Assembly: GCA_977030845.1 (NCBI GenBank)
Contig: OZ365112.1
Coordinates: 18,724,001-18,788,000 of the forward strand
From: Fimbriosthenelais zetlandica
Lineage: Eukaryota
DNA length: 64,000 bases
Direction: 5' to 3'
Shown here: one piece after another, positions 11,895 to 51,435 of the stretch
Position numbering within the stretch: the stretch's first letter is position 1
Layout: the number at the start of each line of letters is the position of its first letter
The notes under the pieces: generated by a model
Seen by the model: only the letters and a program-made list of their open reading frames with translations
What the model was told of the DNA's origin: nothing
The model's database searches: none
Made by a program: the position numbers and the translations under genes

Positions 11895-14800
11895 TCACAG
11901 AGCTTCTTGTTTGAGTAGACTCAGTGAGGTGGGTGGAGGAGGAGCAGGTGAGGAGGCTGGAGTGACTGTAGGAGCAGACAGCATCACCTCTTCCTTCATG
12001 CTCAGTGCCTCCACCTTTTGGCCAATGCTGGATTTGCGTACAAAAGGTTTGCCATGGAGTTTCCTCTGGTGTCGTGTCAGGTTGGTTTGGAAGGTAAAGG
12101 AAGCGCCACACAAGCCACAGATGTGGCGCTTACCAATGGCTATAGCCGGGAACTCGCCGGTCTTGATGCTCTCTACATTAGGTGGCATGGTACCTGGATC
12201 CACCTTCGGTGCTCCAGACAAGTCCAAACCCCGGGACCGATTCTCATCTTCTTTAAGCTTCTTTTTGCTTGGTTCGTTTCCCTCCCGACTTTCCTTCATA
12301 TCCAAGCTGTCCATGGTCTTCCTCTTCTTAATCAACTTGCTCCTCCACTCGTTCTCGCTACCATGTGAGTCCATCAGCTTCTGTTTGAGAGCCATCATAT
12401 TGGCTGAATTCATACCGAGAGGAGAGATATCAGTGATTCCCGCGTGGTACGTGTTCTGATCGGGCTGGTAATTCTCTGAGAGCATCAAAGGTCGTCTATC
12501 AAAGAACATGGCACTGTCTATGGGACTGGCACACCCGCTAGATGGCCTACTGCCTGGTCGGCTGCCCTCTGAGTCGCTCATACTCAGACTGACACCTTTA
12601 TTGGTGAGCATCTCCCTTAGTTTACTCGTGGTATCTGGTGGGAAGTCACGCCCCAGACGACTGAAGGGCAGGCGGCTGTACATATCCTTCTCTATGCTGT
12701 TCTCTTTGTCTTTGATTGGAGCGAAGGAGTAGGATTCACATGGAGGGGGAGGGACTGGTGTCTCATTCAACAGTTTACGAAGGTACGTCTGAGAGAGGTT
12801 TAAGATGGCACTGAAGGGGTTAGGATAATACTCTTTCCTATCATCTAGACTGGAGGAATACTTGTCTGATTTCTCCTCTGAGATCACATTACTGGTGGCT
12901 TTATTGTAGGTGTTAGTAGTTTGATGATCTTTGGTAGCTGTGAGATCTACTGCTGATCTCGACTCATGTGAAGGAGCCTTGGTCTCCACTTCCTGTAGCC
13001 GGCCATGTGAGAGGTTGAGGACTGCAGGCTGACCAACAGACGGAGAGGATGAACGCCTTTCAGCATTAAGTTTCTCCTCCTGGGTCCTCTTCTCCTGCTC
13101 CTGCTTGTATTCCTCCATGATGGCTTTTTTGGGCGGGAGTTTGACTGTATGGCTTGGTTCTCGGGTGATCACTGGATCTTTTCTCACCGGTGACTTGCGA
13201 CTGTCTTTCTCCTCTGCTGAGAGAACACGTTCTACGACATCCTGTAGGTGGTGAACACTACCACGAGCTGGCTCAATAGACGGTCCTCCCTCAGGGTAGT
13301 AGGTTGGGTGGTGAGAGGGAGGCAGACCTGCTCCTGAGAAAGATTTACCAGGCAAGATTGACGTGGTGGGGGAGGCACTCCTCTGAGATGTCAAGAGCGG
13401 TATGGCAGGATGGGTGACCGGGATGGCGGGGGAGTGCTGCGACACTCTTCCTTCATTTCCAACTTCTATAAGAAACAGATATTTATTAGTTTCTAACCAT
13501 CATACGATAGATATCATCCTTGTTATATGAGTAACGAAATAAATTCATTTTTTTAATTTCAAGTACAAAAATCTATGGACACCCACCTTGCTGCTGGGAC
13601 GGGGCCTCCTTCTTGGGATCAACCTTGTGAACGTGGCTCAGATGGCGGTACAGGTTACGCTTGGAGGCGAAATTCTGACTGCACAAACTACAGACCCACT
13701 CTGACGGCTTCCCACCGGATTTAACTGTACAAGAGAAAGATACAACAACATTTTAAATACCCAATCAGAACAAGTACTAACACTGAATATTGATAAGCTG
13801 ATGACTTAAATCAAATTAAGGTCTGGGGAATCAATCTAATAGAAATATTATTATGAGAATATTTCTTTAAAATAGAGAATATATGAAGGAAATTACCAAT
13901 ATCAGGACTGCTTGTGTCACTTCTTGAGCCCGAATCCTTGAGAGCAAGATGAGTAGTATGGATATGGCTTCTGAGAAGAGAAGCCATGGGGAAGATGTGC
14001 CCACAAATCTTACATGGGAACCTCCCCATGGCTTCCCCACTCAGGTTCAGTGGTCCACCATCTGACTCTGATAACATTTTCATTTCTGCCGTGGCCATGG
14101 CAACCATAGTACTCATGTCAGTTTCTGCAGGTCCAACAGCTGGCATGGTAATCTTGTGAACATAACTGGCATGCTTGGTCAGATTCTTGTAGCTCGAGTA
14201 TTTTTTGGTACAGAAAGAGCATTTATACGGCTTCCTGATGACACCAGAATCTTTGGAGGGTTTAAGATGGGGTGGGATGGAGTCAGCCACTCGTGGGAGG
14301 TTGGAATAGGCCTGCTCCAGGGAGGCTGGGAGGAAGGCTCCAGGGTGGTGTGACATCATGGCTGTCATACTGTGGAGGGCAGCAGGATGTGGTAGGAAAG
14401 GTGTGGCCAGGGCTGGGTCCAAACCACTGGTCAAACCAGGATTCATCATGTCAGCCATTGTGTAGTGAAACTTTGGTTTATAGCTTTTTGTTGCGTCTGG
14501 GGTGACTTCTTGCGGCTGTGGTTGCTGATGTTCTTGCTTGTGAACTTTGGGTTTACTGAGATCTATGGCACCTGAGGTGTCACTGTACACTGTGCTCCTG
14601 TCAATGCCGCGACACGTGGGCTCGTGCTTGGCCAGTTGTGTAGGAGAACCAAAAGAGGAGAGGCACAGACTGCAGGAGATTTCTTCTCTCGGAGTGATAA
14701 CAATATAGTCCTGGTCTTTACCGGGTTCAGAAAGATAAGGAGGGAGGATGTTCTTGTGAGGGGTAGTGTCTGAAGCTCCAAGGCCGGGTATGGACGGTGA

Positions 14801-16228
14801 ATAACGACCAATCTTGCCTTCAGACACCACAGATGGAGAAAATCGTCCATAATTGGACTCGGAAGTGATATTCATTTTAGATGGTAGTTTGTCTTCCACA
14901 GCATCTCTTTTATTATCCAGGAAGTGATCAGCATCCTCTGAGCTTACCGAGTGTTCACTTCTCCTGTCTGATTCATCTTTACCAAGACTGTCTCTAGTGC
15001 GGCGTCGACACGGGCGGCCATGGAAGGTCCGCTGATGCCGGGTCAGATTGGTACGAAATGTGAAGGACTTGTTACACGGGTTACAGAAATATAATTTTTG
15101 CGTACTGTTAGCAGGGGATTCCTGATCACTGGCAAGTGAGGGTGAGACAGCAGGGGAGGGAGCACGAAGGGACTGCATGGCTTTAGCTAACATAGGAGTA
15201 GCCATGGGAGAGTTACAGGCCTGACTACCTGGGGTAGTATCAGGGGTCCAGTAATCAGAACCATTAGGTACTGTAGGTGAAGGTGTAGAGTAATATTGAT
15301 CATCTGGAGCTACACCTGACCGAGCCAGATCTGCAGTGAAGATCTCCCTCTTGATGGATTCAGGTTTGGAGAGGATCTTCATACGGAAAGCATCCATTCG
15401 ATTCTCTTTATTACCACCATCGTCAAGACACTCAGTAACTGGCGCCAGCAGGTCTTTGCTCATTGCCCTTGCTCGTTGTTTGGCGTCACTTACAAACTGT
15501 CCAATGTCTTTAGAAGGAGAACCCAGAGTTTTGGGTAATTCCTCATCATACCAAAGCTTCATAGCTTGAGCAACGAATGAGTTAACAATGGTCTCAGGTG
15601 GTCCTCCTGGAGTTTTAGGCTTGGGCTCAGTTTCTAAAGAATTAAAATTCTGGTCGAGCTTTTCCCCATAGCTATGTAAGTCCATCTCCTCACTTATCTC
15701 ATGTTTCAACACCTTAGCGGGTTTTCGTCTTCGCCTCACTTTAGGTTCTGTGTTGGTTTTTGAGTCATCTGTTTCAGGTTTGAGACCAGAACCTTGTGAA
15801 GACACCTCAGAATCAGTATCTTGAGATGCTTCACTGCCTGCTGTCTCAGCCATCTTGTTCTTTTCTTCTGTTTCAGTTGTCTCCACTGAGACATGAGACT
15901 CTGTAGGATTATCAGAGCCAGAATGAGGCTTCACTGGACTCTCATCTTCAGCAATCACTAGACGGTCTGAATCACCTGTGGAGTCGAGATCAGTGGCTGA
16001 ATAGTCGCAAGCTACTGGTCCTGACTCTCTATCAGTAGAACTACCTACTGGAAGCTCAGCAGGTGTGTTCATAAGTCCACTATCCACTCTCACCTCAGGC
16101 TCCCCTACTTCCCTCATCTTCTCTGTTACAAAGTGATGACTTGACTCTTTTCCCACTTCCTCCACGCGATCCTCTGTGGCTTGTTTTTGCAGCGAAAGTT
16201 CCATTTTCTGTCCCTCAACGGTGTTCAT
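11895..16228 (-). CDS. Large (~1346 aa) transcription factor with six dispersed C2H2/C2HC zinc fingers; tentatively resembles PRDM2/RIZ finger types, no PR/SET domain found
   Basis: Exons 13897-16228, 13587-13724, 11895-13465 (4041 nt, in frame). Fingers: YFCNPCNKSFTFRTNLTRHQRTFH, ISCSLCLSSFGSPTQLAKHEPTC, YKCSFCTKKYSSYKNLTKHASYVH, FPCKICGHIFPMASLLRSHIHTTH, WVCSLCSQNFASKRNLYRHLSHVH, HICGLCGASFTFQTNLTRHQRKLH. Acidic/Ser-rich linkers and basic NLS-like stretches. Confidence 0.9.
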
Positions 16229-28593: not shown

Positions 28594-31500
28594 ATGAATC
28601 TCGACACAGCTGCATCATCCGTTGACGAACCTCCTGACTTAATCTGGCCATTCCAAGTGGATAGCTTGTGCAAACTATGTGTTAAATACATCGTTTCTGA
28701 ACTACATTATTTCTGCCATCTTGAGCCAAATGAGAATCGTTGGAGCCTTCGACCGGGTGTATACCTGCCTCCCCAAATCTCAGAGGATTTACTCCGAGAA
28801 TTTCAAAGACGTAAAATTGATTTGTCTGATGGCTTACTACATATTTTCTCTGATAAAGCAGCTGCGCCTTTGCGCAGGGTTAAAATCAATGCCTCGGAAG
28901 GAATGACAGATAAGGGCCTACGATACCTCCTGGCACATTACCTGATAGATCTGGACATCACATGGCATCATAAATTAACAGAGAAAAGTTACCTGATGAT
29001 TCAAGAATATGGCCGTAATCTCACACGTTTAGCCATCCGTAACGCTGCGCCTATGTTAAAATATGATCTTCTTAAATACTTGCCAGAAAACCCAGGCTTT
29101 AGACTCTTTGTGGAGACTGGAGATCTTAGCTCCATTGACCCTTTGGCTAAAGCTCTTGTCATGAAGAAAATACAGCAGACAGAAGAGGATGCCATTGCTA
29201 TCCATTTCACATGTCCAAAATTAAGATCTTTGACGATTCATTCACTCTGTTTGATCCGACATAGGACGCCAGATTACCTGGAGAGTGTATGTCGACCGTT
29301 ACATGGTCTGACATATATTGATCTCTCTCATTGTCCTGTTCTTGTGGACTCGCTTGTTTGGCTGAAGGGATTACCTCATCTTCTTGTCCTCATCCTCCAC
29401 TGTGTGCCAATTACCAGCTTGAAGGAAGCCTTTGACAACATAGGACACTTAAAGTCCCTCAGGTGGGTCATTAGAATTCACTAGGGGATTTTATGATCAT
29501 ATTGCTAACAATTATAATTGGATATGATCATATCTGAATGACTGTAAAACTTCTTATTGAATTGATGGATATCAAACAATTTTGTATTTAATTAATTTCC
29601 TTATCTAAGTAATGATTAATTAAAAACAGGTACGTCCTAATGATAATATATAATTGGAATATTTTATTTTATATACATGTATACTATGTGTCCTGATGAA
29701 TTATAGATCGTGGCAAAAATTTAAAAGCAATTTTCTCATCATTATGGAAATCTTCATTTCTCTGTCTTTACAGGACCCTCGATGTGAGTACCTCTCACCG
29801 CAACAGCCATATATTTGCTGATGGCGGCGTGGAGTTGGAAGTATTATTAGAAAAGTTGCCAAATCTGTGTGAACTCGACCTCTCAGGCACCAACATCGGT
29901 ATTCCTACTGATACAGTCCTCCGCGATGGCAGGTCTGTATTTTTTATTCACATTTATATCTATGAGGATCTATGAAAAGGTTGCTGGTGATTAATTCTAG
30001 TTATTTACCCATCTGTTTGTTTCAGAAATAAAAGTGGTATTCAGGGTCTCCATCGTGATGATTTAGAATTTCTCGGTCTACTTGGTTGTCCAGGCTTCGA
30101 TGATGGTACACACACCATTAAGGCAAAGCGGGTGAGGATCTTACCTCTGACTTTATTGCCTCTTGGTCCAATTTAAATAAAAATTTAAAGGCAATTAATT
30201 AATATATTTTAAGGGCTGCCCTACAGTTATATATATGACCTGATGCTGAGGGAAATGCTTGTATTTAGAATTGGTCGCTATGGATTGAGTTTTTATATGC
30301 CATGTTTTTGTGTTTGATCATGTAGGTAGCTGGGTCGTGGGGGGTGGAGGAGATGTTATGTGCAGGCCGCGTGTATGCTGAGAGGAAGGGTATGGTGACC
30401 ATGATTCTTCCTTCTCTTGTCATATCCCTGAGAAGCGTCGAGTACCAAGAAGAGCAATACCAACAGGCATTAACGGTAAGTTATTAACAAATACTAATCA
30501 CAGACCAGCATACAAGTTCAATATGTCATGAAAAATAACCATCAGTGGCTTGAAAATTATAAGTTAGATCTAAAAATGGGTAATTTGTTGAACTCGAAAA
30601 TGGAAGTCAATATATTTATTTCAGATTGTTCTAGACATCCTCCACCTGTACCTCAACTCCTACACCATAGCACATTACTCTGTGTAAGTATTCGTTAAAT
30701 TAAGCTTCTAAGAATACCTGGTATTTATTTTAGTGGAGTACGGTACCCTTAATATTTCCATTTCTTGGTCTTTCAGTCTCAGTCTGGCCTCTATCCTTGA
30801 TAAACATATGGGAAAGACTAAATGGATCAACACCAGGATGAAAAGGTAATTTCTTTAGATCAGAATTTATTGTTCTTAGATTAAGAAATCCTGTGGCACA
30901 TCTTAATCAGACCAGTTTACTTCACCATCACCCCCCGTCTATATTTTTTTCTTTCATCCTGTATTCTTTCATCCTTTAGGACTATAATTCTTTCCTTGCT
31001 GGACCTTATGGAGTGTCAGTGGCTCATGACTCACTTTAACAAGGCTGAACTCATGAGGAAGTGCTGTGCTACACTCTCTTACTTTGACTTGGCTAAGGAC
31101 CTTGTAAGTGGCCGATATTTTTTGAAATTCTTAAATGAATCCTGTCATATTATAACACAAATTTCATAAGTTACTACTACTGTACTGAAAAAATGACCAT
31201 TGGTTCTTGTAGAGATTTTGAACCTTTAAATAGCATTTTATGTGTCGTATGTTTTTACCCTGACCACTCTTGTCTTTCAGGTGTTCGCATATGAACGAGT
31301 AGTCACTATGCTGCTGTCACTGATCACTATAGATGGTGACTTAATGACCCATCAGGCCGTACAGACAGCCATCTACATCCTCCGTTATATGAGCTCACAG
31401 GTGGATGTACGTTACAAAGAAATGGCGGGTCAACTTGGCTGTATCAAAGTAGGCTTTATTTACAATATATTTATTGTTGATGTAAAACCTGTGTAAATTT

Positions 31501-33130
31501 TATGGATTTTTTAGATTTCAGAAGAGGTAAATGTATATGAATATTTCTCTCCACATGTTTCAGAAAATGCTGAGCGTGATAAACTGCTGTGTGGAGGCAG
31601 ACAATGATGGGAGCCCAGTCTTAGTGCGTGCATGGAGCGTCTTATGGAGTCTCACAGGTACTCATATCTCATACATATCTCATCTCTCTCTTAGGACAAC
31701 ATATTTCTCTTTCTATTGCTTGATATAAATAATATGTCTTCTCTTATTATAAATTTGGGATCTTTCTTTAGACATGTCTCCGGCAAATTGTGAACGCTTC
31801 CTGGAGCATGATGGTCTGAAAACTTTCATGTATTGCTTCCGTGTGAGTATAACTATATGATAAAAGGAGTAAAATGTCCTAAAAATTAAATAGTATTTTT
31901 GGAAATAAAGTTTACAAATGGCCAACCACAATTTTACCGCGCAACTTAGCTCTTTACCTTTTCCTGTTTTTCTCATTTCAGTGGCTTCCAAATGACAGCT
32001 CTTTAACCAACAAAATATTTGGAATGTTGGTAAGTTCCCTAACTGACCATTTTCTTACATCGCTTATTTAAATATTTTATTTGTTACAATTAAAATTGTT
32101 TCCTGAAATCCTATATCAATTCAGAGCCATGGCCCCATATTATGTGAGGTGACACGTCAGTACCGTATCTATTATCTTATACCAGAACTAATAATTTCTC
32201 TGGTCACTTGTTTATACTCGTGAATATCGTTTTAGAGAAATGTTGTGGAAGTCCCACATTTGAGGCCAGCACTCATGACTGAGGAATATATCACAATATT
32301 CAGGTAATATTAGAAACAGTTCTTTCCTGTTCGCAAGTAGCAATTTTTGAGAACGAAAAAAATATTAAGATATCTAATTTATAATTCTAATAATATATAT
32401 ATGGATGTGGGATGGACTTTATTTTTATCTTCTAGTTACATGCTGCACTCTGAGCTTAACATCAGTAACAGTGCCTGTAGCATCCTGGCTCACCTGCTGG
32501 CAGACGGGCCTGAGTCGTGGACAGTCCAGATACCTGTGGATGACCTGATAGGACAGATGACGGTCACTATAGAGCGCTGGGATCTCAATGAACGTCACAA
32601 CGTTAGATACAGGTCAGATATATTGTATAGCCGAAAGTGAAGCCCATGAATTTATATATACTTAAAGATAATCAAGTTATAATTTTTAAATGATTTATTT
32701 ATTCTGTTCCAGATCCTTTGAACCAATGCTTCAGTTGTTAAAGTGCTATAATCCCATGATTTGCATGTACTGGGCAGCCTGGGAAGTGACCAATATGGTC
32801 CTCAAGGATGGTAAGGGCCATCTTTATATTTTGTAAACCGATTCTCAATTATTCTTAGAAATCATTTACAATATATTGTGGAATTCCCCACAATAGACTT
32901 TGTGGAAATGTCAGTCTGCATAATATGTCTGGGAATTCTTTTGATTTATTCATTCTAAGCGTATCTTATTTTATGCCGCAGCCACTCGCTACTGCCCAAT
33001 ATTGGACAAGGAAGGAGGCATCCTGCTGTTACAGGAACTCCTCTCTGATCCCCGCCCCACTGAGAAGATCCGGCAGCTGGCCGAGCTCATCCTAGAAGAG
33101 TGGGAATCATGGAAGAGAACGCTTTCCTGA
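28594..33130 (+). CDS. ZER1: ZER1/ZYG11-family CRL2 (ElonginBC-Cul2) substrate receptor; BC/VHL box, LRR, ARM repeats
   Basis: N-terminal SLCKLCVKYI...LPPQISEDLL box; LRR region; exons from 28594-29462 and 29774 onward to 32982-33130. ARM motifs AWSVLWSLTDMSPANCERFL, GMLENVVEVPHLRPALM, SACSILAHLLADGPESW, RWDLNERHNVRYRSFEPML, YCPILDKEGGILLL align with recalled ZER1. Confidence 0.9.
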
Positions 33131-34334
33131 CAACATTCAACCATCTAACATGTGGTCGTTTCGTATATATTCACTAGTTTTAACATGCCCTACTGCTACT
33201 TACCTTGTGAAGCTTTATCACTACTTCAGTACAAACATTTATTTTATATACAAATGATGGCCAGCCCGACTGGTAAGGAGATAAGACCTTCTGTTGAAAC
33301 TTTCACAGGATATGTGAATTCATTCGCCTTGGCGGTTTGGGATCAGAACATTGTATCGTGCCATATCACTTTGATGTGAAGGCAAAAACCTTTTTTTAAC
33401 GCCACGGAAATCATATCATTATATTAAGTCTGCTAATGAGTCTTGGTCTGAGAATTATCTTCCAGCACGAGGATATTAATTTAATGTCTACAGACCATTG
33501 TTGATGTTCAACTGGGAGATCATCTAGATTACATGACTATCAAAGTTACTATCAGCTTTTATTCATTTATTTCGTGTAAAAATAATTACTAATTGCCAAG
33601 TTTGCAGGGCAAATATATATATAGGATTTATTTAATTCACTTTAATATTTTAAAGTATATTTTTTCTAGCGTATTAATTTTGCAGTGATTTATTTTCTGT
33701 TGGACACATTCATTGAAAAAAGTTTCATTGTATAGATCGCATTTATTTATTAGTATGTATTCCACAAATTGTTTTGTAATTTTATAAAAAAATATATGTT
33801 AGGATAGGATCCTAGGACAATATTGCAGATATTCTTTCCATACATTACGATCATTCTAACTAAATACATGTAAAATAGATATAAAACATCAATTGTATGG
33901 GTATTAGTTCCCACTAAACCCATTAGATACTTCAGCGTTACCTGGTCATTATCCATTGCAGTTTTATCGGCAACAAAAATCCATAAAAATTGATATAACC
34001 AAAATAAAAACTTCTAAAAAATACATCGTTAGTAACAATAACTTAAGACAAATAAAATCTTCAACAATTTGCCAACGCTGCTCAACCGCGGTCTGTCGTG
34101 TGACTGACGAGGGGTGGTCATCAAAGTTCACAGCTAAAAAATTAAAGAAAAACAGGTTATAACATGTATATTGGTTCTAAATAAATTCAGATAAACAGAT
34201 TTTTCGTCATTTTCTTTTGTTTGATCGCCGATAGGCCAAGGAAAGATTATTAACATACCCTTTTAGCCAAGAAGCAACTTACTAAGACAAGTTCAATAAA
34301 TATGGAAATTCATATGGTCGAATAAAGTGAGAGC

Positions 34335-36144
34335 TCACCCCAGATTTGCTAGCTTTTTCTTGTACATATTCTCAAGTTGTAGTTTTCGTAGCTGGTCAGC
34401 GTTAAGTTCTACTCCTCTATCCAAGTCCTCTCGCAGACTTGCGACCTGTATCCAAAAATACAAGCCAATCATTTACTAACTCTGTCATTTATGATTGTGT
34501 TTTCAGACATACATGCGACTACTAGGTTAAAACTTAATGATATACAGGCTCACCTCTTGCAATTTTTTCTTAAACTTGCGAATGTCTTTAGCCCTCCGGT
34601 CCTGTCCTGCATCTTCTTCGCCACTCCTGGAATCACTGTCACCACATGAGCCACCAGTCTGGCAGATTACTACAAATAAAAAACTCCGTTAACATACCAA
34701 GTACAAAAGCCGCATAGCGTAAAATATAATTACATTAAAACGAATCAGACATAAGTTAAATAAAGCTAATAGACTGCTTGCCTCTTTGGTGATCAAGACG
34801 GAGTGCTAACCCACGCCCACGACCTATGGGACCGTGAGAGACGGTGGAGGAGCTAGTGGAGGATCCAGGAGGCTGAGTGCAATCATTCTCATTACGCTCT
34901 TCATTCTTCCTCAATATAGCACGTCCACGACCGATCCCAGCCAATGCTAGCGGGTTTCCAGGCCTCTGTAAAGGTCGAATAAAATAGCATTGAAATTATA
35001 TACAAATTATATTAAACATCCTAACAAAGTTGGTTATGTAATGTAGTATACATGCTAACAAAAAAGCATCTGACGTATAGAACATGGTTCCTTCCTAAAG
35101 ACAAAATATCAAAATCTATAAAGACTATACTCGCCTTAGATTTTTCTGTGGCCTTTGGTTTGGATTTTGGCTGTCGTAATAGACCTCTTTCACCATTTGG
35201 GCCAGTTTCGCTGGGTGGTTCCCATTCTTCATCAGGGTGGATATCTTCGTATGGTGAGGCTCCACTCAACCATTTATTGATGTCTTTTGTTGGACCTTGA
35301 TGACTTGGAACTTTAGGAGCCAATGGTTTAATTTCAGCAGCGTTCAGTCGTTGAAGGATGCCTGGCTGAACTGAAAAAGGGGGTTTTCAAGTTTACGTTA
35401 ATATTACAGATAGTAGATGATTATAAGCCACTTCTAAGTGTAAGCAGATAAAGTCATGTAAAATGTAAGTTGGAATATTACCCAGATCGGCCTCCCAATC
35501 CTCGGTCTGCCAATGCTGGACTGGAGGAGTATCCTCTAATGGAACGTACCTGACAGGTGTAGCTGAAAAATGGAAAAGAAAAATTCAACATGCATTTTAA
35601 TTTACTAGCTAAAACAGTCGATAGTAAAATGCCATTATTATACTTTTAATAAATTCTATTGTAAATTAAACTGACTAACTGGACAACTTATGGAGCACTG
35701 CGACAGAGATAAAGTACTTACGGCGAGGTGCAAGGGCCTGCTCCAGTCTGACTTTGAAGGGACATGTGGCCATATGCTGACGTATCTGGCTTTTCTCAAT
35801 CACATGAATATGGTTAAAAGGACATCTCTCAACTTCGACGCCCGTGTAGACCTAGAATAATAGCAAGAGACGATCAGTTCACCAGAGTGAGCGATAGCGA
35901 GTTAGGGAAATCAAAATATACCTGGCTTAGACTTCAAACTTTACTACTATGTTTATCAATTTTGCACTGTTCGGTCGTGAGTAAAACTTAAATAAAATAT
36001 AATTGATTCCAAAGCTAAAGGGAAACTTCTCACCTTCTTGCACTTTTCAAGATGTCTTGAAAATCGGTAAGCATCTACCAAATGCTCCTTGTTGTAGGGA
36101 CATACCATCAGTTGATATTTGTCCGGCACATCGTATTTCGCCAT
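34335..36144 (-). CDS. GTSF1: Gametocyte-specific factor 1 (GTSF1/Asterix)-like protein, ~322 aa, two CHHC (U11-48K type) zinc fingers with an extended C-terminus
   Basis: Exons 36034-36144, 35722-35851, 35482-35562, 35135-35370, 34782-34965, 34554-34669, 34335-34445 (969 nt). Fingers CPYNKEHLVDAYRFSRHLEKC and CPFNHIHVIEKSQIRQHMATCP; acidic Trp motifs HWQTEDWEAD and DEEWEPP. The model needs GC donors at 35134 and 34781. Confidence 0.85.
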
Positions 36145-36809: not shown

Positions 36810-37940
<1,131 letters not shown>

Positions 37941-46920: not shown

Positions 46921-49900
46921 TCAGAGATCTAAATAGAGCACTTGCGTAGCGGTTATGGCTCCGCAGAAGCTCAAGACGGAAGCGGAAATAACAACTGCTA
47001 CAGTGCTTCCGCTGTAGTGGATGATGCTGCCCATGAGAGAGGAGAGGAGGAACTGGGCCACAAAAACCATGGAGGAGAGGATAGCTACATCTGTCCCAAG
47101 GCCTCGTACCTGACTCTCCCCCAGGCTGGCTGCAGGAGGATGAGCGGGAGGCTGCTGCTGGTGGCTTCCTTCCGCCACCAATGGCTGGAACTGTTAATAT
47201 GTATAACCAAATATGTACATGTCTCTAACTTACATCTCTAATGTTACTGTTACAATATGGTTTTAATTTTGTAATCGTTGCATTAAGAGTGAAGTTAGCA
47301 GTCTCAAGGGAAATTGATCGGAGTTCTAAGGGCTGCTTAAACCGTAAGTCCCTAATAGTCTGTAGATCAGCACTTTACCCAGGAGACCATATAGTGGCCT
47401 ACAAGCCCACAAATATTAACTCATTATATTGTTATGCTGCCAACAAGCAGCGGCAATGATTCATTTAACTCTGGATAGGCACTGATGAATAGTCTCCCCA
47501 TGTACTCCCACCCCCTCTGCCAGGACAACTACATGCTTGTAACATTCCCTTTCTTTGCTGCACACTGAGCTGGAACATTGATCACCTCCTATGAGCGGGG
47601 CAGGTAATTAAGCATATAGGTAACAGATAGAAGACATGCATGTACATTTATTTACAGAATTCCTCAGCAATAATGTATTGATGTTCTTGTTCAACCAAGC
47701 TTCACGGGGAACGAAATGTCCTTTTACCCCAGCTGGCAATATAGGTGTCCAGATAATACAATCTATAGGCCTACATGTATTGAATCATGATTCAATCGTG
47801 ACTGCTCTTAAAGTCTGATTCGTAAAGTATTGGTGAGGCGGAAGTAAAAGTATCTGATAATATATAATCACAAGGTTAGAGATCCTAAAATCTTTTCTTC
47901 TGTCTCAACCTTTAATATGTGCCAGGCACAATAATTGGCATATTTTTGCCCCAGTTCCAGGACCAGGCGAGTTCTTTCTTCATTGTTTCAATGTTATATT
48001 CGTCAGAGTCATTTGGATGAATCCCCATTTCCCACATGGAGTTCCTATAGAACCAGCTACTACACTGCACTACATCCAGTTCATTGCTAAGACTGGCAGT
48101 GATCTTTTACAACTGCGGAATTCCCATGGTAGCTTGTATTAGGAGAGACAAATCATCACACCTCTCTGGTGCCATGCGTTCAATCAGCCATTCAAACATG
48201 AGCAGAGAGCCTCAGCTTAATGAGTGCCAGTTGTGAACCTTTGATCTGATACAGGCACCGCCTGCTCAAACAAAATGAAAGCTCGCACGGGAATCTCACA
48301 AGTGCTGAACAAGAATTGGAATTCAAGCTTAGAATTGTGGTTATGTTTTTACCTTTTCATCAGAATGTTCCTTTTATAATTATTCCAATTGCCTATCGTT
48401 GTTTAAACAATTTAGTGGGGGTAGCAATTGCCTTTGGATTCACTGTTGTTTTATACAGTGAAAACGATGTAGGTAATATTACATGTATGAGGGACAGCCT
48501 ACTGGGCCAAAGCTTGTCCAAAACCTTTTTCTATTCTGATGAAATCATAACATAGAACTCTGAGAGAAAGAATATGAGAAAGGACTGTAAACTTACCGTG
48601 TTGCTGGAGTGATAATGTGCTATCAGCACGTATGGTATTGTGAACAAGGTAGCATACATGATACCCGCGGTGGGTGACAGTAAGATAACGGTGACTGGAT
48701 GGCGCGTTAGAGCCAGCACCATGCTTCCTACAGTGTACACCAGCTGGCTCAGTATGTAAACCCTCTTGGCTCCTGAAACAGAAGCAGTAAAATATTACAA
48801 CCTGATCATCACCTTTCAAAGATGGTTCATTGTTACATAACTATCGGAAAAGAAATGGACTCAGGCTATACATGGGTTATAACACAATGCTCCCTTTGTT
48901 GTATGCAACTTAAAGCCTATACACGTTTCGAGTTATATTGCTTCATTAGATTTGTGAAGAGAGTAAGGATGGGACTTTATTTCATTAAAGGCTTCCCCTG
49001 CAGCTGGCATAAAGATGATTTAGAGACCTGCATTTTTTCCTTTCCGTGGATAATCAGAATCTGATTAGATCAAAAACTAGGGTGGAGCGATGATCACTGG
49101 AGTTTCTGTGGTGAGCATGGTTCCTCAACAGATGGGACTTAAATAGACTTCATTGCTTCTAATGCAATAGATACTTACTGAAGTAATGAAGTTATCTCAC
49201 ATTGGATATATGAATATGCCGGAGATCAGCAGGATATTGCAAAATATTATCTCTTATCTTGTCCAATTTAAGTGACTTCACCTTCCCTCTTCTGCAGTAT
49301 TTCTATCTGGAGGGATCTGCCGCCTATAGGTTCCTTCCCTTTGCCTCTAAGTCTTCACCCCATTAAACCAAGAATGAAAAGCTTGTTATTTATTAATGTA
49401 ATGCCCTGAACGGGGTATGAAAAACCTGATGCCCAGCGACACATTGAATTATTGATTAAGACATAATGCAATAGGGACAATAGACTTAATTGTTCCACTC
49501 TTGAGGATGGGTAATGAATACGAAAAACCCGTGGAAGCAAAAAGCTCAAATGCAACAGTCTGCTTTGCAATTATCCCCCTGGCCGTTGATTGGACTATTT
49601 TCAAAAGAATCACGTCACCACAATTAGGAACGAATTTGCCCTTGGGAATGGTGCCAATTCAGTTATTCCAACATTTCCAAAACATGAATCACAACATAAG
49701 ATCATGTCCTAACATGAATATTCTCATTAAGACTCAAAGGGCATTGGATATCACCCTTTAACACCTGGTCATCTGTAACAACTGTTTTGTCTCATTGTAA
49801 ATTTGGTTAATATTACTCACCGTATTTTTTAATTATCCTTTCAATTGAGAGTGAATATAAGGAGCAGGACAGTGAATAAAGCGACATCCCAAATGATCCC

Positions 49901-51435
49901 ATACGCACACCTTTCTGGTAAAGCTGATGTGCAGGACTTCCCTCTGGTGAAGAAGGGTCTCCACCATAAACTGCCTGACCAACAAAATCAGTGAAGTAAA
50001 GTGAATAGCACACCAGTGACATCCAGCAGAATAGGTTAGTGAGGCATAGAATGGCAATGCTCCGAGGCATTTTAATGATGGATTTGAGGTAGGTCTTCAA
50101 GGAAACTGGCTCTATGATGGGTTCATTGTCTGTTTTCTTGGGAGTCTGTGCTTCCATTGCCTCTGTGTCCCCCTTATTGGGAGGGACTTGGTTTTGGTAG
50201 GAAGGGGGAAAGTCATTGGCTAGTTCTGTGTCATAGGTGCTATCGTTTTTGATCGGTTGAGGTTTATGTTCAGCATCTTCAGGCCAGGTGTTGTTTTTTA
50301 CTCGGCCTTGACTCAGTGAGGTTTCCTCATTTGCTACCTTCCCCTTTGTTTCATCCTCACTGGTCTCGCTCTCTTCATTGGTGAATTTTTTATATTTTTT
50401 CCCACACTTCCGTTTCCGTTTCTTCTGTAGATCCTCTTCAGTGATACCAAGTTTATCAAGGGGCATTTCCTTGATAGAAGTGATGGTCAAAATAAGGCAG
50501 ATTATGTACATAAATAGAACTATGGAGAATACTACACGGACTTGGCTACCGAAGGATGCCCCGACTGATGTGCTCCCCCAGTCGATACCACCAAAGATAT
50601 AACCCAGGCAACCTCCAAGGCCAGCCAAGACTGTGAAGGTGCTCAGCCCGAGAGAATGGTCTTCCTTAATGGTGACATCTAACATGTATGCCCGACAGGG
50701 GGATTGGCAGGCATCACAGCTGAAGTCCAGCATAACCACGCCAATAACTGTGAAGAGGATGCTCCAAGTGTGCGGTATAATGTGACCATTAGCTACTTCA
50801 GGAGTTGTATCTGAAGTAGCCATATCAGTCACTGCTGAGGACACCATCATTTCTGGCATGATGGACTCCATGACATAGTCATCATGGCTCTTATTGTACT
50901 CACTCCTGAATTCACCACTGGATCCAGTAAACATCCCAATTACTGGTTCTGTTGTTGCTTCCAGTGCAGATTGGATGTGAACTTCATACACATCTCCTAT
51001 CAGTTTTCCGATGGATTTACCCTCGGGAACAAGTATTAGACCCAAAACAATGCCGCAAGACAGGATCATGATGAATGGTCTTCGTCGTCCAATGCGGGAG
51101 GGACACTTGTCACTGAGTGAACCTAAAATAGGCACCAGAAAGATGCCCAGAAGTGGACTTAGACACCAGACCAAAGTCATATACATGACCGGAACACCAA
51201 TCTGGAGCAGTATCGGGGTGACAAAAGCTGTTTCTGCTGCATAACAGAATTCTATACCGCAGACACATGCACTGATGAGGACGAGTTGGAGGCGAGTCTT
51301 TCTCTGAGTCAGGTGGGAGAAGTCATCGTCTTCTTTGAGGGCAAACTTCGACTGGACATGCGTCAGTATGGTCTCCTTGGGTAGTTCATCCTTCACATTA
51401 TTGAGGGCTCGAAACATTGACGCAACCAGCGTCAT
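46921..51435 (-). CDS. SLC45A: SLC45 family H+/sugar symporter (MATP/SLC45A-like), ~686 aa
   Basis: Exons 49821-51435, 48597-48772, 46921-47190 (2061 nt, in frame). Motifs GIEFCYAAETAFVTPILLQIG, SDKCPSRIGRRRPFI, LDFSCDACQSPCRAYMLD, NLFCWMSLVCYSLYFTDFVGQAVYGGDP, RGLGTDVAILSSMVFVAQ. Paralog not resolved. Confidence 0.95.

What the first reader, a model, noticed from the sequence alone, without database searches (positions are those of the whole stretch)
34335..34592. GTSF1-like piRNA factor fused to a PYM/eIF2A-type C-terminal helical module
Seen: the last two exons encode AKDIRKFKKKLQEVASLREDLDRGVELNADQLRKLQLENMYKKKLANLG-stop. Known (recalled): the C-termini of PYM1 ([25 protein letters not shown]...EQLEKL) and eIF2A ([34 protein letters not shown]) share this pattern, and the PYM segment mediates 40S association; Caprin has a related GERLNQDQL hairpin. 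Mouse GTSF1 and fly Asterix are short proteins with two CHHC fingers and a PIWI-binding acidic Trp region, bind tRNA/RNA, and potentiate PIWI slicing; I know of no such C-terminal module in them. Inference: a GTSF1 variant that could tether PIWI complexes to ribosomes, linking piRNA slicing or biogenesis to translation.
Basis: partly seen in the sequence, partly recalled or inferred. Interest (0 to 1): 0.75.

Follow-up and report, generated by a model that had tools for sequence, protein, structure and literature searches.

The report
GTSF1-like gene with eIF2A-like tail
An invertebrate gene for a helper protein of the transposon-silencing PIWI machinery seems to carry an extra 49-residue tail resembling the tails of two ribosome-associated proteins (eIF2A, PYM), but neither RNA data nor related species could be checked.

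Summary
On the minus strand, seven short exons (36144-34335) with compatible phases read as one 322-aa protein. Exons 1 and 2 each hold a CHHC finger whose best match is GTSF1, in the same order as in GTSF1. The last 49 residues, split by intron 6, form a basic amphipathic helix.

The tail aligns to it without gaps over 34 residues (13 identities). That beats every one of 20,000 composition shuffles and all but 10 of 20,000 pattern-preserving shuffles. It is still weak by search standards: BLASTP E 0.08, PDB-wide E 2.2, no Pfam family. The G-x-x-L-N-x-D-Q-L turn is shared with the Caprin-2 HR1 helix-loop-helix.

Two things could not be tested:
- **Exon joins in mRNA:** no sequencing run was listed.
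- **Whether relatives share the layout:** all homologue and locus searches were blank, largely because short exons cannot pass the tools' length limits.

Ribosome tethering remains speculation. I rate this a plausible new variant of the GTSF1 family, of moderate interest. The scan's notes hold no earlier mention of GTSF1, PYM or eIF2A in this genome.

The parts
36034..36144 (-). Exon 1: start codon and CHHC zinc finger 1 (residues 1-37)
   Evidence: Pfam zf-U11-48K E 9e-10. Best PDB match is mouse GTSF1 6x46_A 8-39, E 4.5e-9, then the GTSF1 chain 9nhb_E, 4.9e-8. Donor AAG|GTGAGA.
35722..35851 (-). Exon 2: CHHC zinc finger 2
   Evidence: Pfam zf-U11-48K E 2.1e-6. Best PDB match is mouse GTSF1 6x46_A 48-81 (finger 2), E 5.5e-5. 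Sites TTCTAG| and GCC|GTAAGT.
35482..35562 (-). Exon 3: acidic Trp stretch (W98, W103; net charge -5 over residues 81-110), candidate PIWI-binding central region
   Evidence: Composition. No significant alignment to GTSF1 in the PDB, so the assignment rests on position and on the family's known aromatic central region (PMC9539491).
35135..35370 (-). Exon 4: linker rich in Pro/Gly/Ser/Thr with W141 and W157; ends at a GC donor (AAG|GCGAGT)
   Evidence: Frame and splice sites. No Pfam family. The alternative GT donor at 35126 is weak.
34782..34965 (-). Exon 5: linker with two RG motifs (GRGR at 198, GRGRG at 234); ends at a GC donor (GAG|GCAAGC)
   Evidence: The alternative GT donor at 34800 keeps the same phase. 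No Pfam family.
34554..34669 (-). Exon 6: acidic/Ser patch, then the first 13 residues of the basic tail helix (AKDIRKFKKKLQE, 34592-34554)
   Evidence: No Met in exons 3-6, so this exon can only be translated as part of an upstream ORF.
34335..34445 (-). Exon 7: last 36 residues of the tail, including the G-V-E-L-N-A-D-Q-L turn motif, plus the TGA stop (34337-34335)
   Evidence: The ungapped match to the eIF2A tail continues in register across the exon 6/7 junction. The turn motif is shared with Caprin-2 8k9c_A.

Best explanation
This is a real, single-copy, seven-exon gene for a long (322 aa) member of the GTSF1/Asterix family. It has two N-terminal CHHC fingers, an acidic Trp-containing central stretch, and a ~140-residue low-complexity linker with two RG motifs and an acidic/Ser patch. 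Its last two exons encode a 49-residue basic amphipathic tail of the kind found at the extreme C-termini of eIF2A and PYM. Shown: the exon structure, the identity of the fingers, and a tail similarity to eIF2A that exceeds composition and hydrophobic pattern. Inferred: the tail folds as helix, G-x-x-L-N turn, helix, as the same motif does in Caprin-2, and serves as a docking element. The most likely partner is the 40S subunit or the ribosome-associated RNP network that includes PYM, eIF2A and Caprin. That would place the GTSF1-PIWI complex on ribosome-bound or granule-bound RNAs. My odds: exons 6-7 belong to the CHHC ORF, about 0.8; the tail is truly of the eIF2A/PYM kind rather than a look-alike, about 0.5; it binds ribosomes, about 0.2.
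For: Gene model: six introns of 108-182 nt, all with AG acceptors behind pyrimidine tracts. Four are GT donors and two are GC donors with otherwise consensus flanks. The phases are compatible, and Met occurs only at residues 1, 13, 64 and 313, so the tail cannot be translated on its own. Fingers. Tail: the eIF2A string was verified 34/34 against 8dys_A 553-586. The ungapped 34-residue alignment has 13 identities and BLOSUM62 score 64, against 27.8 +/- 5.2 for shuffles (0 of 20,000 reach it). With hydrophobic and polar positions kept fixed, 10 of 20,000 shuffles reach it (z 4.4). In a PDB-wide phmmer search, the eIF2A C-terminus was the only eukaryotic protein matched across the whole module, second only to one RNA polymerase beta segment. 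Among named clusters nearest to exon 7 by language-model features, Caprin ranks first and PYM (Mago-bind) accounts for 20 of 100 (lead-level scores). [quoted passage not shown] That piece should contain the first helix of the motif if the 18-residue difference between the deposited chain and the native length is an N-terminal tag (my inference).
Against: No database-scale search makes the tail significant. Exhaustive phmmer with exon 7 found 0 hits at E<=0.001. Pfam has no family for it. The PDB-wide E for eIF2A is 2.2. The two halves searched alone hit only generic coiled coils such as vimentin and the proteasomal ATPase. BLASTP with composition adjustment gives E 0.08 for the single comparison. 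AlphaFold2 on the single sequence gives one continuous helix, and Foldseek found nothing. Two GC-AG introns in one small gene are unusual, and there is no RNA evidence for any junction. No relative was retrieved, so conservation of the architecture is unknown. Fly PYM does not bind ribosomes (PMC4072592). [quoted passage not shown]
Confidence: 0.5

Rival explanations
1. The tail is a generic basic amphipathic or coiled-coil helix that looks like the eIF2A/PYM tail by convergence. It would serve self-association (dimerisation, granule or nuage scaffolding), or act as a Lys-rich nuclear import signal (RKFKKK ... KKK), with no link to ribosomes.
For: The a/d heptad positions are 9/14 hydrophobic over the whole tail and 5/6 in the first helix, with Asn at two core positions. 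AlphaFold2 models one long helix. The halves of the tail hit vimentin and proteasomal ATPase coiled coils at E about 1. No Pfam family. BLASTP E is only 0.08. In Caprin-2 the related segment takes part in a dimer (PMC11480233). Fly Asterix acts with nuclear Piwi, so import signals are plausible in this family (PMC9539491).
Against: The match to eIF2A is ungapped end to end over 34 residues, includes the KKKL block, the Gly and the QL pair at fixed spacing, and beats pattern-preserving shuffles (10 of 20,000). Like the eIF2A and PYM tails, it sits at the extreme C-terminus. PYM and Caprin clusters dominate the named neighbours by language-model features.
Confidence: 0.3
2. The gene model is wrong or holds for only a minority of transcripts. 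The main product would be a short, ordinary GTSF1 ending after exon 4 or 5 (for example through retention of a GC-donor intron). Exons 6-7 would then be an alternative 3' end, or belong to another transcript.
For: Both introns flanking exon 5 have GC donors, and such donors are often linked to alternative splicing (general knowledge). Reading through the exon 4 donor stays open for 37 more codons, which would give a protein of about 220 aa, closer to described GTSF1 sizes (PMC9539491). No RNA run could be listed.
Against: Exons 3-6 hold no Met, and exon 7 only an internal one at residue 313. No promoter-like gap lies between exons 5 and 6 (112-nt intron). All phases are compatible and the frame closes with a stop only in exon 7. 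The first AATAAA follows 583 nt after that stop. Another note of this scan reports GC-AG donors elsewhere in this genome (s1-223603, unchecked).
Confidence: 0.15

Closest known systems
GTSF1 / Asterix (UPF0224 family; mouse GTSF1 PDB 6x46, GTSF1 chain of 9nhb)
   Same: Two tandem N-terminal CHHC fingers that match finger 1 and finger 2 in the same order, followed by an acidic stretch with Trp residues where the family has its PIWI-binding aromatic region (PMC9539491).
   Different: About twice the described size (322 aa, against 'relatively small proteins' in PMC9539491). It has a long RG-containing linker and a structured basic C-terminal helix that is not described for mouse, fly, silkworm or nematode members (PMC9539491, PMC13650160). 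The central region did not align significantly.
C-terminal tail of eIF2A (human, 8dys_A 553-586)
   Same: Position at the extreme C-terminus, and an ungapped 34-residue match with 13 identities: K-x-I, the KKKL block, L-x-E, the Gly, and L-x-x-x-Q-L-x-K at identical spacing.
   Different: No beta-propeller. The similarity is below database-scale significance. The function of the eIF2A tail is itself unsettled (PMC10570035, PMC12221301).
C-terminal eIF2A-like domain of PYM/PYM1
   Same: A short tail on a small adaptor protein whose N-terminus binds another machine (Mago-Y14 for PYM; presumably PIWI here). PYM clusters make up 20 of the 100 nearest named clusters to exon 7. The human PYM tail mediates 40S association (PMC4072592).
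   Different: No tool-verified PYM tail sequence was available: the PDB holds no chain covering it, so no direct alignment was made. Fly PYM's tail does not bind ribosomes (PMC4072592).
Caprin-2 HR1 N-lobe helix-loop-helix (8k9c)
   Same: G-x-x-L-N-x-D-Q-L turn motif (GEHLNPDQL there, GVELNADQL here). In the crystal it links two antiparallel helices (PMC11480233).
   Different: The local score is only modest (p about 0.005-0.01 by shuffling). The spacing from the KL block to the Gly differs by three residues. The rest of HR1 (Pfam Caprin-1_dimer) is absent.

Membership tests
GTSF1/Asterix family | Two tandem CHHC (zf-U11-48K) zinc fingers at the N-terminus | tested here: met
   Pfam E 9e-10 and 2.1e-6 for exons 1 and 2. 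Nearest atlas clusters all carry PF05253.
GTSF1/Asterix family | Fingers closer to GTSF1 than to other CHHC proteins (U11-48K, TRM13), and in the same order | tested here: met
   Exon 1 matches 6x46_A 8-39 at E 4.5e-9, against U11-48K at 0.21. Exon 2 matches 6x46_A 48-81 at 5.5e-5, against U11-48K at 0.0097.
GTSF1/Asterix family | Central region with aromatic residues that bind PIWI | tested here: inconclusive
   W98 and W103 lie in an acidic stretch directly after finger 2, but exon 3 gave no GTSF1 match in the PDB search.
GTSF1/Asterix family | Binds PIWI proteins and potentiates slicing or silencing | not testable with these tools
   Needs biochemistry or genetics.
eIF2A/PYM-type C-terminal tail | A helical segment of about 50 residues at the extreme C-terminus | tested here: met
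   Last 49 residues, with helix 2-48 at pLDDT 95.7.
eIF2A/PYM-type C-terminal tail | Sequence similarity to the eIF2A/PYM tail beyond chance | tested here: inconclusive
   Above both shuffle nulls (0 of 20,000 and 10 of 20,000). But BLASTP E is 0.08, PDB-wide E is 2.2, and no profile could be built.
eIF2A/PYM-type C-terminal tail | Association with the 40S subunit | not testable with these tools
   Known for human PYM only (PMC4072592).
Caprin HR1 domain | Match to the HR1 dimerisation domain (Pfam Caprin-1_dimer) | tested here: not met
   No Pfam hit even at E<=10. Only the 9-residue turn motif is shared.

The most novel reading that the evidence does not exclude
The KKKL...G-x-x-L-x-x-x-Q-L tail is a portable docking module for the 40S subunit or ribosome-associated RNPs, shared by eIF2A, PYM and this GTSF1. 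In that case this invertebrate lineage recruits the PIWI slicing cofactor directly to ribosome-bound transcripts. That would be a physical link between piRNA-guided cleavage and translation in an animal group where ribosome-guided piRNA processing is thought to be absent.
Probability: 0.15. Interest if true: 0.75.

Novelty: new variant of a known kind. Interest (0 to 1): 0.45.

Why it matters
GTSF1 is the conserved cofactor that makes PIWI proteins efficient slicers. Its variable C-terminal part sets partner specificity, but no structured extra module has been described in it. If one lineage has added the tail that lets human PYM ride on 40S subunits, two things become testable. The first is what this widespread but poorly understood eIF2A/PYM tail actually binds. 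The second is whether piRNA-guided cleavage can be coupled to translation outside amniotes. If the tail turns out to be an ordinary coiled coil or import signal, the gene is simply a long lineage-specific GTSF1.

Tried and rejected
- **Exhaustive phmmer of exon 7 (36 aa) against 1.84 billion representatives:** 0 hits at E<=0.001. The query is too short to reach significance, so this says little, and it used the only job.
- **The search for homologous proteins, three times** (49-aa module, exon 4 frame, exon 1 frame): no candidates each time. The length window of 0.55-1.75 times the query keeps every exon-sized query away from proteins of about 320 aa.
- **The look-up of sequencing runs**, kinds 'rna' and 'any': none was listed (two searches found the tool busy). 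Read laying could therefore not be used.
- **Exact look-up of the nearby 540-aa MFS ORF** to identify the source record: not on record.
- **Foldseek of the single-helix model** against Swiss-Prot models: nothing shown.
- **PDB search with exon 3:** no GTSF1 match.
- **PDB search with the recalled PYM string:** no PYM chain covers the C-terminus.
- **Full-length spliced protein:** it has no reference and long sequences may not be typed, so the obvious full-length search and full-length fold were left out.
- **Rejected explanations:** membership of the Caprin HR1 family (no Pfam match), and an origin from a repeat or transposon (single copy).

Full report
**What is there.**
The finding lies on the minus strand. 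From an ATG at 36144, seven exons read as one ORF of 322 codons ending at TGA 34337-34335:
- exon 1: 36144-36034
- exon 2: 35851-35722
- exon 3: 35562-35482
- exon 4: 35370-35135
- exon 5: 34965-34782
- exon 6: 34669-34554
- exon 7: 34445-34335

The six introns are 108-182 nt long, and all have AG acceptors behind pyrimidine-rich tracts. Four donors are GT with good consensus. The donors of introns 4 and 5 are GC in otherwise consensus contexts (AAG|GCGAGT and GAG|GCAAGC). Weak GT alternatives at 35126 and 34800 keep the same phase.

Met occurs only at residues 1, 13, 64 and 313. Exons 3-7 therefore cannot start a protein of their own that includes the tail. The first AATAAA lies 583 nt past the stop. 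The gene is single-copy in the window and the tail exons are not repeats.

The neighbours are ordinary. A Methyltransf_16 lysine methyltransferase gene is transcribed divergently from 36810, 666 bp from the start codon. A ZER1-like gene converges on the 3' end.

**The N-terminus is GTSF1.**
Exons 1 and 2 each hit Pfam zf-U11-48K (E 9e-10 and 2.1e-6). Against all PDB sequences, exon 1 matches mouse GTSF1 finger 1 best (6x46_A 8-39, E 4.5e-9) and then the GTSF1 chain of 9nhb. Exon 2 matches finger 2 of the same protein (48-81, E 5.5e-5). U11-48K itself scores far lower.

Directly after finger 2 comes an acidic stretch with W98 and W103 (net charge -5). This is where the family has its aromatic PIWI-binding region (PMC9539491). 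Exon 3 gave no significant GTSF1 alignment, however.

The next ~140 residues are low-complexity. They contain GRGR and GRGRG motifs at residues 198 and 234, followed by an acidic/Ser patch. None of this has a Pfam family.

**The tail.**
They carry 13 Lys/Arg and 8 Asp/Glu. Hydrophobic residues fill 9 of the 14 a/d heptad positions overall and 5 of 6 in the first helix. AlphaFold2 on the single sequence gives one helix covering residues 2-48 at pLDDT 95.7. Isolated helices often come out this way, so the result does not decide between a long helix and a hairpin.

**Is the likeness to eIF2A, PYM and Caprin real?**
It is 34/34 identical to the deposited human eIF2A chain 8dys_A, residues 553-586. 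The window's tail aligns to those 34 residues without a gap, from K-x-I through the KKKL block and the Gly to L-x-x-x-Q-L-x-K. There are 13 identities and the BLOSUM62 score is 64.
- Composition shuffles give 27.8 +/- 5.2, and 0 of 20,000 reach 64.
- Shuffles that keep every hydrophobic and polar position fixed reach it 10 times in 20,000 (z 4.4).
- The alignment runs in register across the exon 6/7 junction, and the signature is absent from the unspliced six-frame translation. I take this as independent support for that splice.

By search standards the match is weak:
- BLASTP with composition adjustment gives E 0.08 for the single comparison.
- The PDB-wide phmmer E-value is 2.2, ranking behind a segment of bacterial RNA polymerase beta.
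- The two halves searched alone find only coiled coils such as vimentin.
- Pfam has no matching family.
- The exhaustive search with exon 7 found nothing.

For Caprin, the bait returned Caprin-2 (8k9c_A 45-83), which has GEHLNPDQL where this tail has GVELNADQL. The local score is modest, p about 0.005-0.01. In the crystal structure that motif is the loop between antiparallel helices alpha1 and alpha2 (PMC11480233).

No PDB chain covers the PYM C-terminus, so PYM could not be aligned with tool-verified sequence. By language-model features, the named clusters nearest to exon 7 are Caprin (first) and PYM (20 of 100). Their scores are lead-level, 0.5-0.6.

**What the literature says about such tails.**
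- The PYM C-terminus 'bears similarity to eIF2A' and mediates association with the 40S subunit in human cells. Fly PYM does not bind ribosomes (PMC4072592).
- eIF2A 1-437 regains translation inhibition when residues 529-556 are fused back (PMC10570035). If the 18 extra residues of the 603-residue deposited chain are an N-terminal tag, the motif is native 535-568 and that piece holds its first helix. This mapping is my inference.
- PYM1 and Caprin-1 are proximity partners of eIF2A on 40S (bioRxiv 10.1101/2025.05.22.655611).
- Reviews describe all GTSF1 homologs as small proteins with a PIWI-binding tail, and mention no such module (PMC9539491, PMC13650160).
- No paper in the library links GTSF1 with PYM or eIF2A in a relevant way.

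**What could not be tested.**
- *RNA evidence.* No sequencing run was listed for this DNA, so no junction has RNA support.
- *Relatives.* None could be retrieved. Three word-indexed protein searches and two metagenome scans were blank. This is largely because no exon frame exceeds 121 codons and the length filter then excludes proteins of about 320 aa.
- *Full-length product.* The spliced protein has no reference and long sequences may not be typed, so the full-length search and full-length fold were left out.
- *Consequence.* I cannot say whether the architecture is conserved, lineage-specific or already annotated.
- *Earlier notes.* The scan's notes suggest an annelid-like invertebrate and mention GC-AG donors elsewhere in this genome. 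Both are unchecked. No note mentions GTSF1, PYM or eIF2A.

**Reading.**
Most likely this is a genuine long GTSF1 variant whose 3' exons add an eIF2A/PYM-type tail. I commit to a docking role for the tail: a helix-turn-helix that binds the 40S or ribosome-associated RNP network, bringing GTSF1-PIWI to ribosome- or granule-bound RNA. My odds for each step:

| Step | Odds |
|---|---|
| Exons 6-7 belong to the same ORF as the CHHC exons | about 0.8 |
| The tail is truly of the eIF2A/PYM kind | about 0.5 |
| The tail binds ribosomes | about 0.2 |

The main rivals are:
- a generic coiled coil or Lys-rich import signal that resembles the eIF2A tail by convergence (0.3);
- a gene-model or isoform problem around the two GC donors (0.15).

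**Verdict.**
This is a new variant of a known kind, of moderate interest (0.45). It is limited by the lack of transcript and comparative evidence, not by any contradiction.

Noticed in passing
window 35129-35134 and 34776-34781 (minus strand): Both introns flanking exon 5 begin with GC instead of GT, in otherwise consensus donor contexts (AAG|GCGAGT, GAG|GCAAGC). Two GC-AG introns in one small gene suggest regulated or alternative splicing of exon 5 and of the downstream tail.
   Followed up: partly
window 34782-34965 (minus strand, exon 5): Two RG motifs (GRGR at residue 198, GRGRG at 234) lie in the linker. Such motifs are arginine-methylation and Tudor-domain binding sites in PIWI proteins. 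I have not seen them described in GTSF1.
   Followed up: no
window 36810-37046 (+): First exon of a Methyltransf_16 (protein lysine methyltransferase) gene (Pfam E 2.6e-11). It is transcribed divergently, 666 bp from the GTSF1-like start codon, so the two genes probably share a bidirectional promoter.
   Followed up: partly
window 28594-33400 (+): ZER1/ZYG11-like gene. It has a 296-codon first exon with Zer-1-type LRRs and a later exon matching ZER1-like_2nd (E 3.3e-12). It converges on the 3' end of the GTSF1-like gene.
   Followed up: partly
window 11895-16228 (-): Two long intronless ORFs (516 and 805 codons) with scattered C2H2 zinc fingers, in a block that is G+C-richer (0.47-0.48) than its surroundings (0.36-0.39).
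   Followed up: no
window 49813-51435 (-): A 540-codon uninterrupted ORF with major facilitator superfamily domains (MFS_1, E 9.8e-16). No gene with exactly this product is on record in the contig collection.
   Followed up: partly
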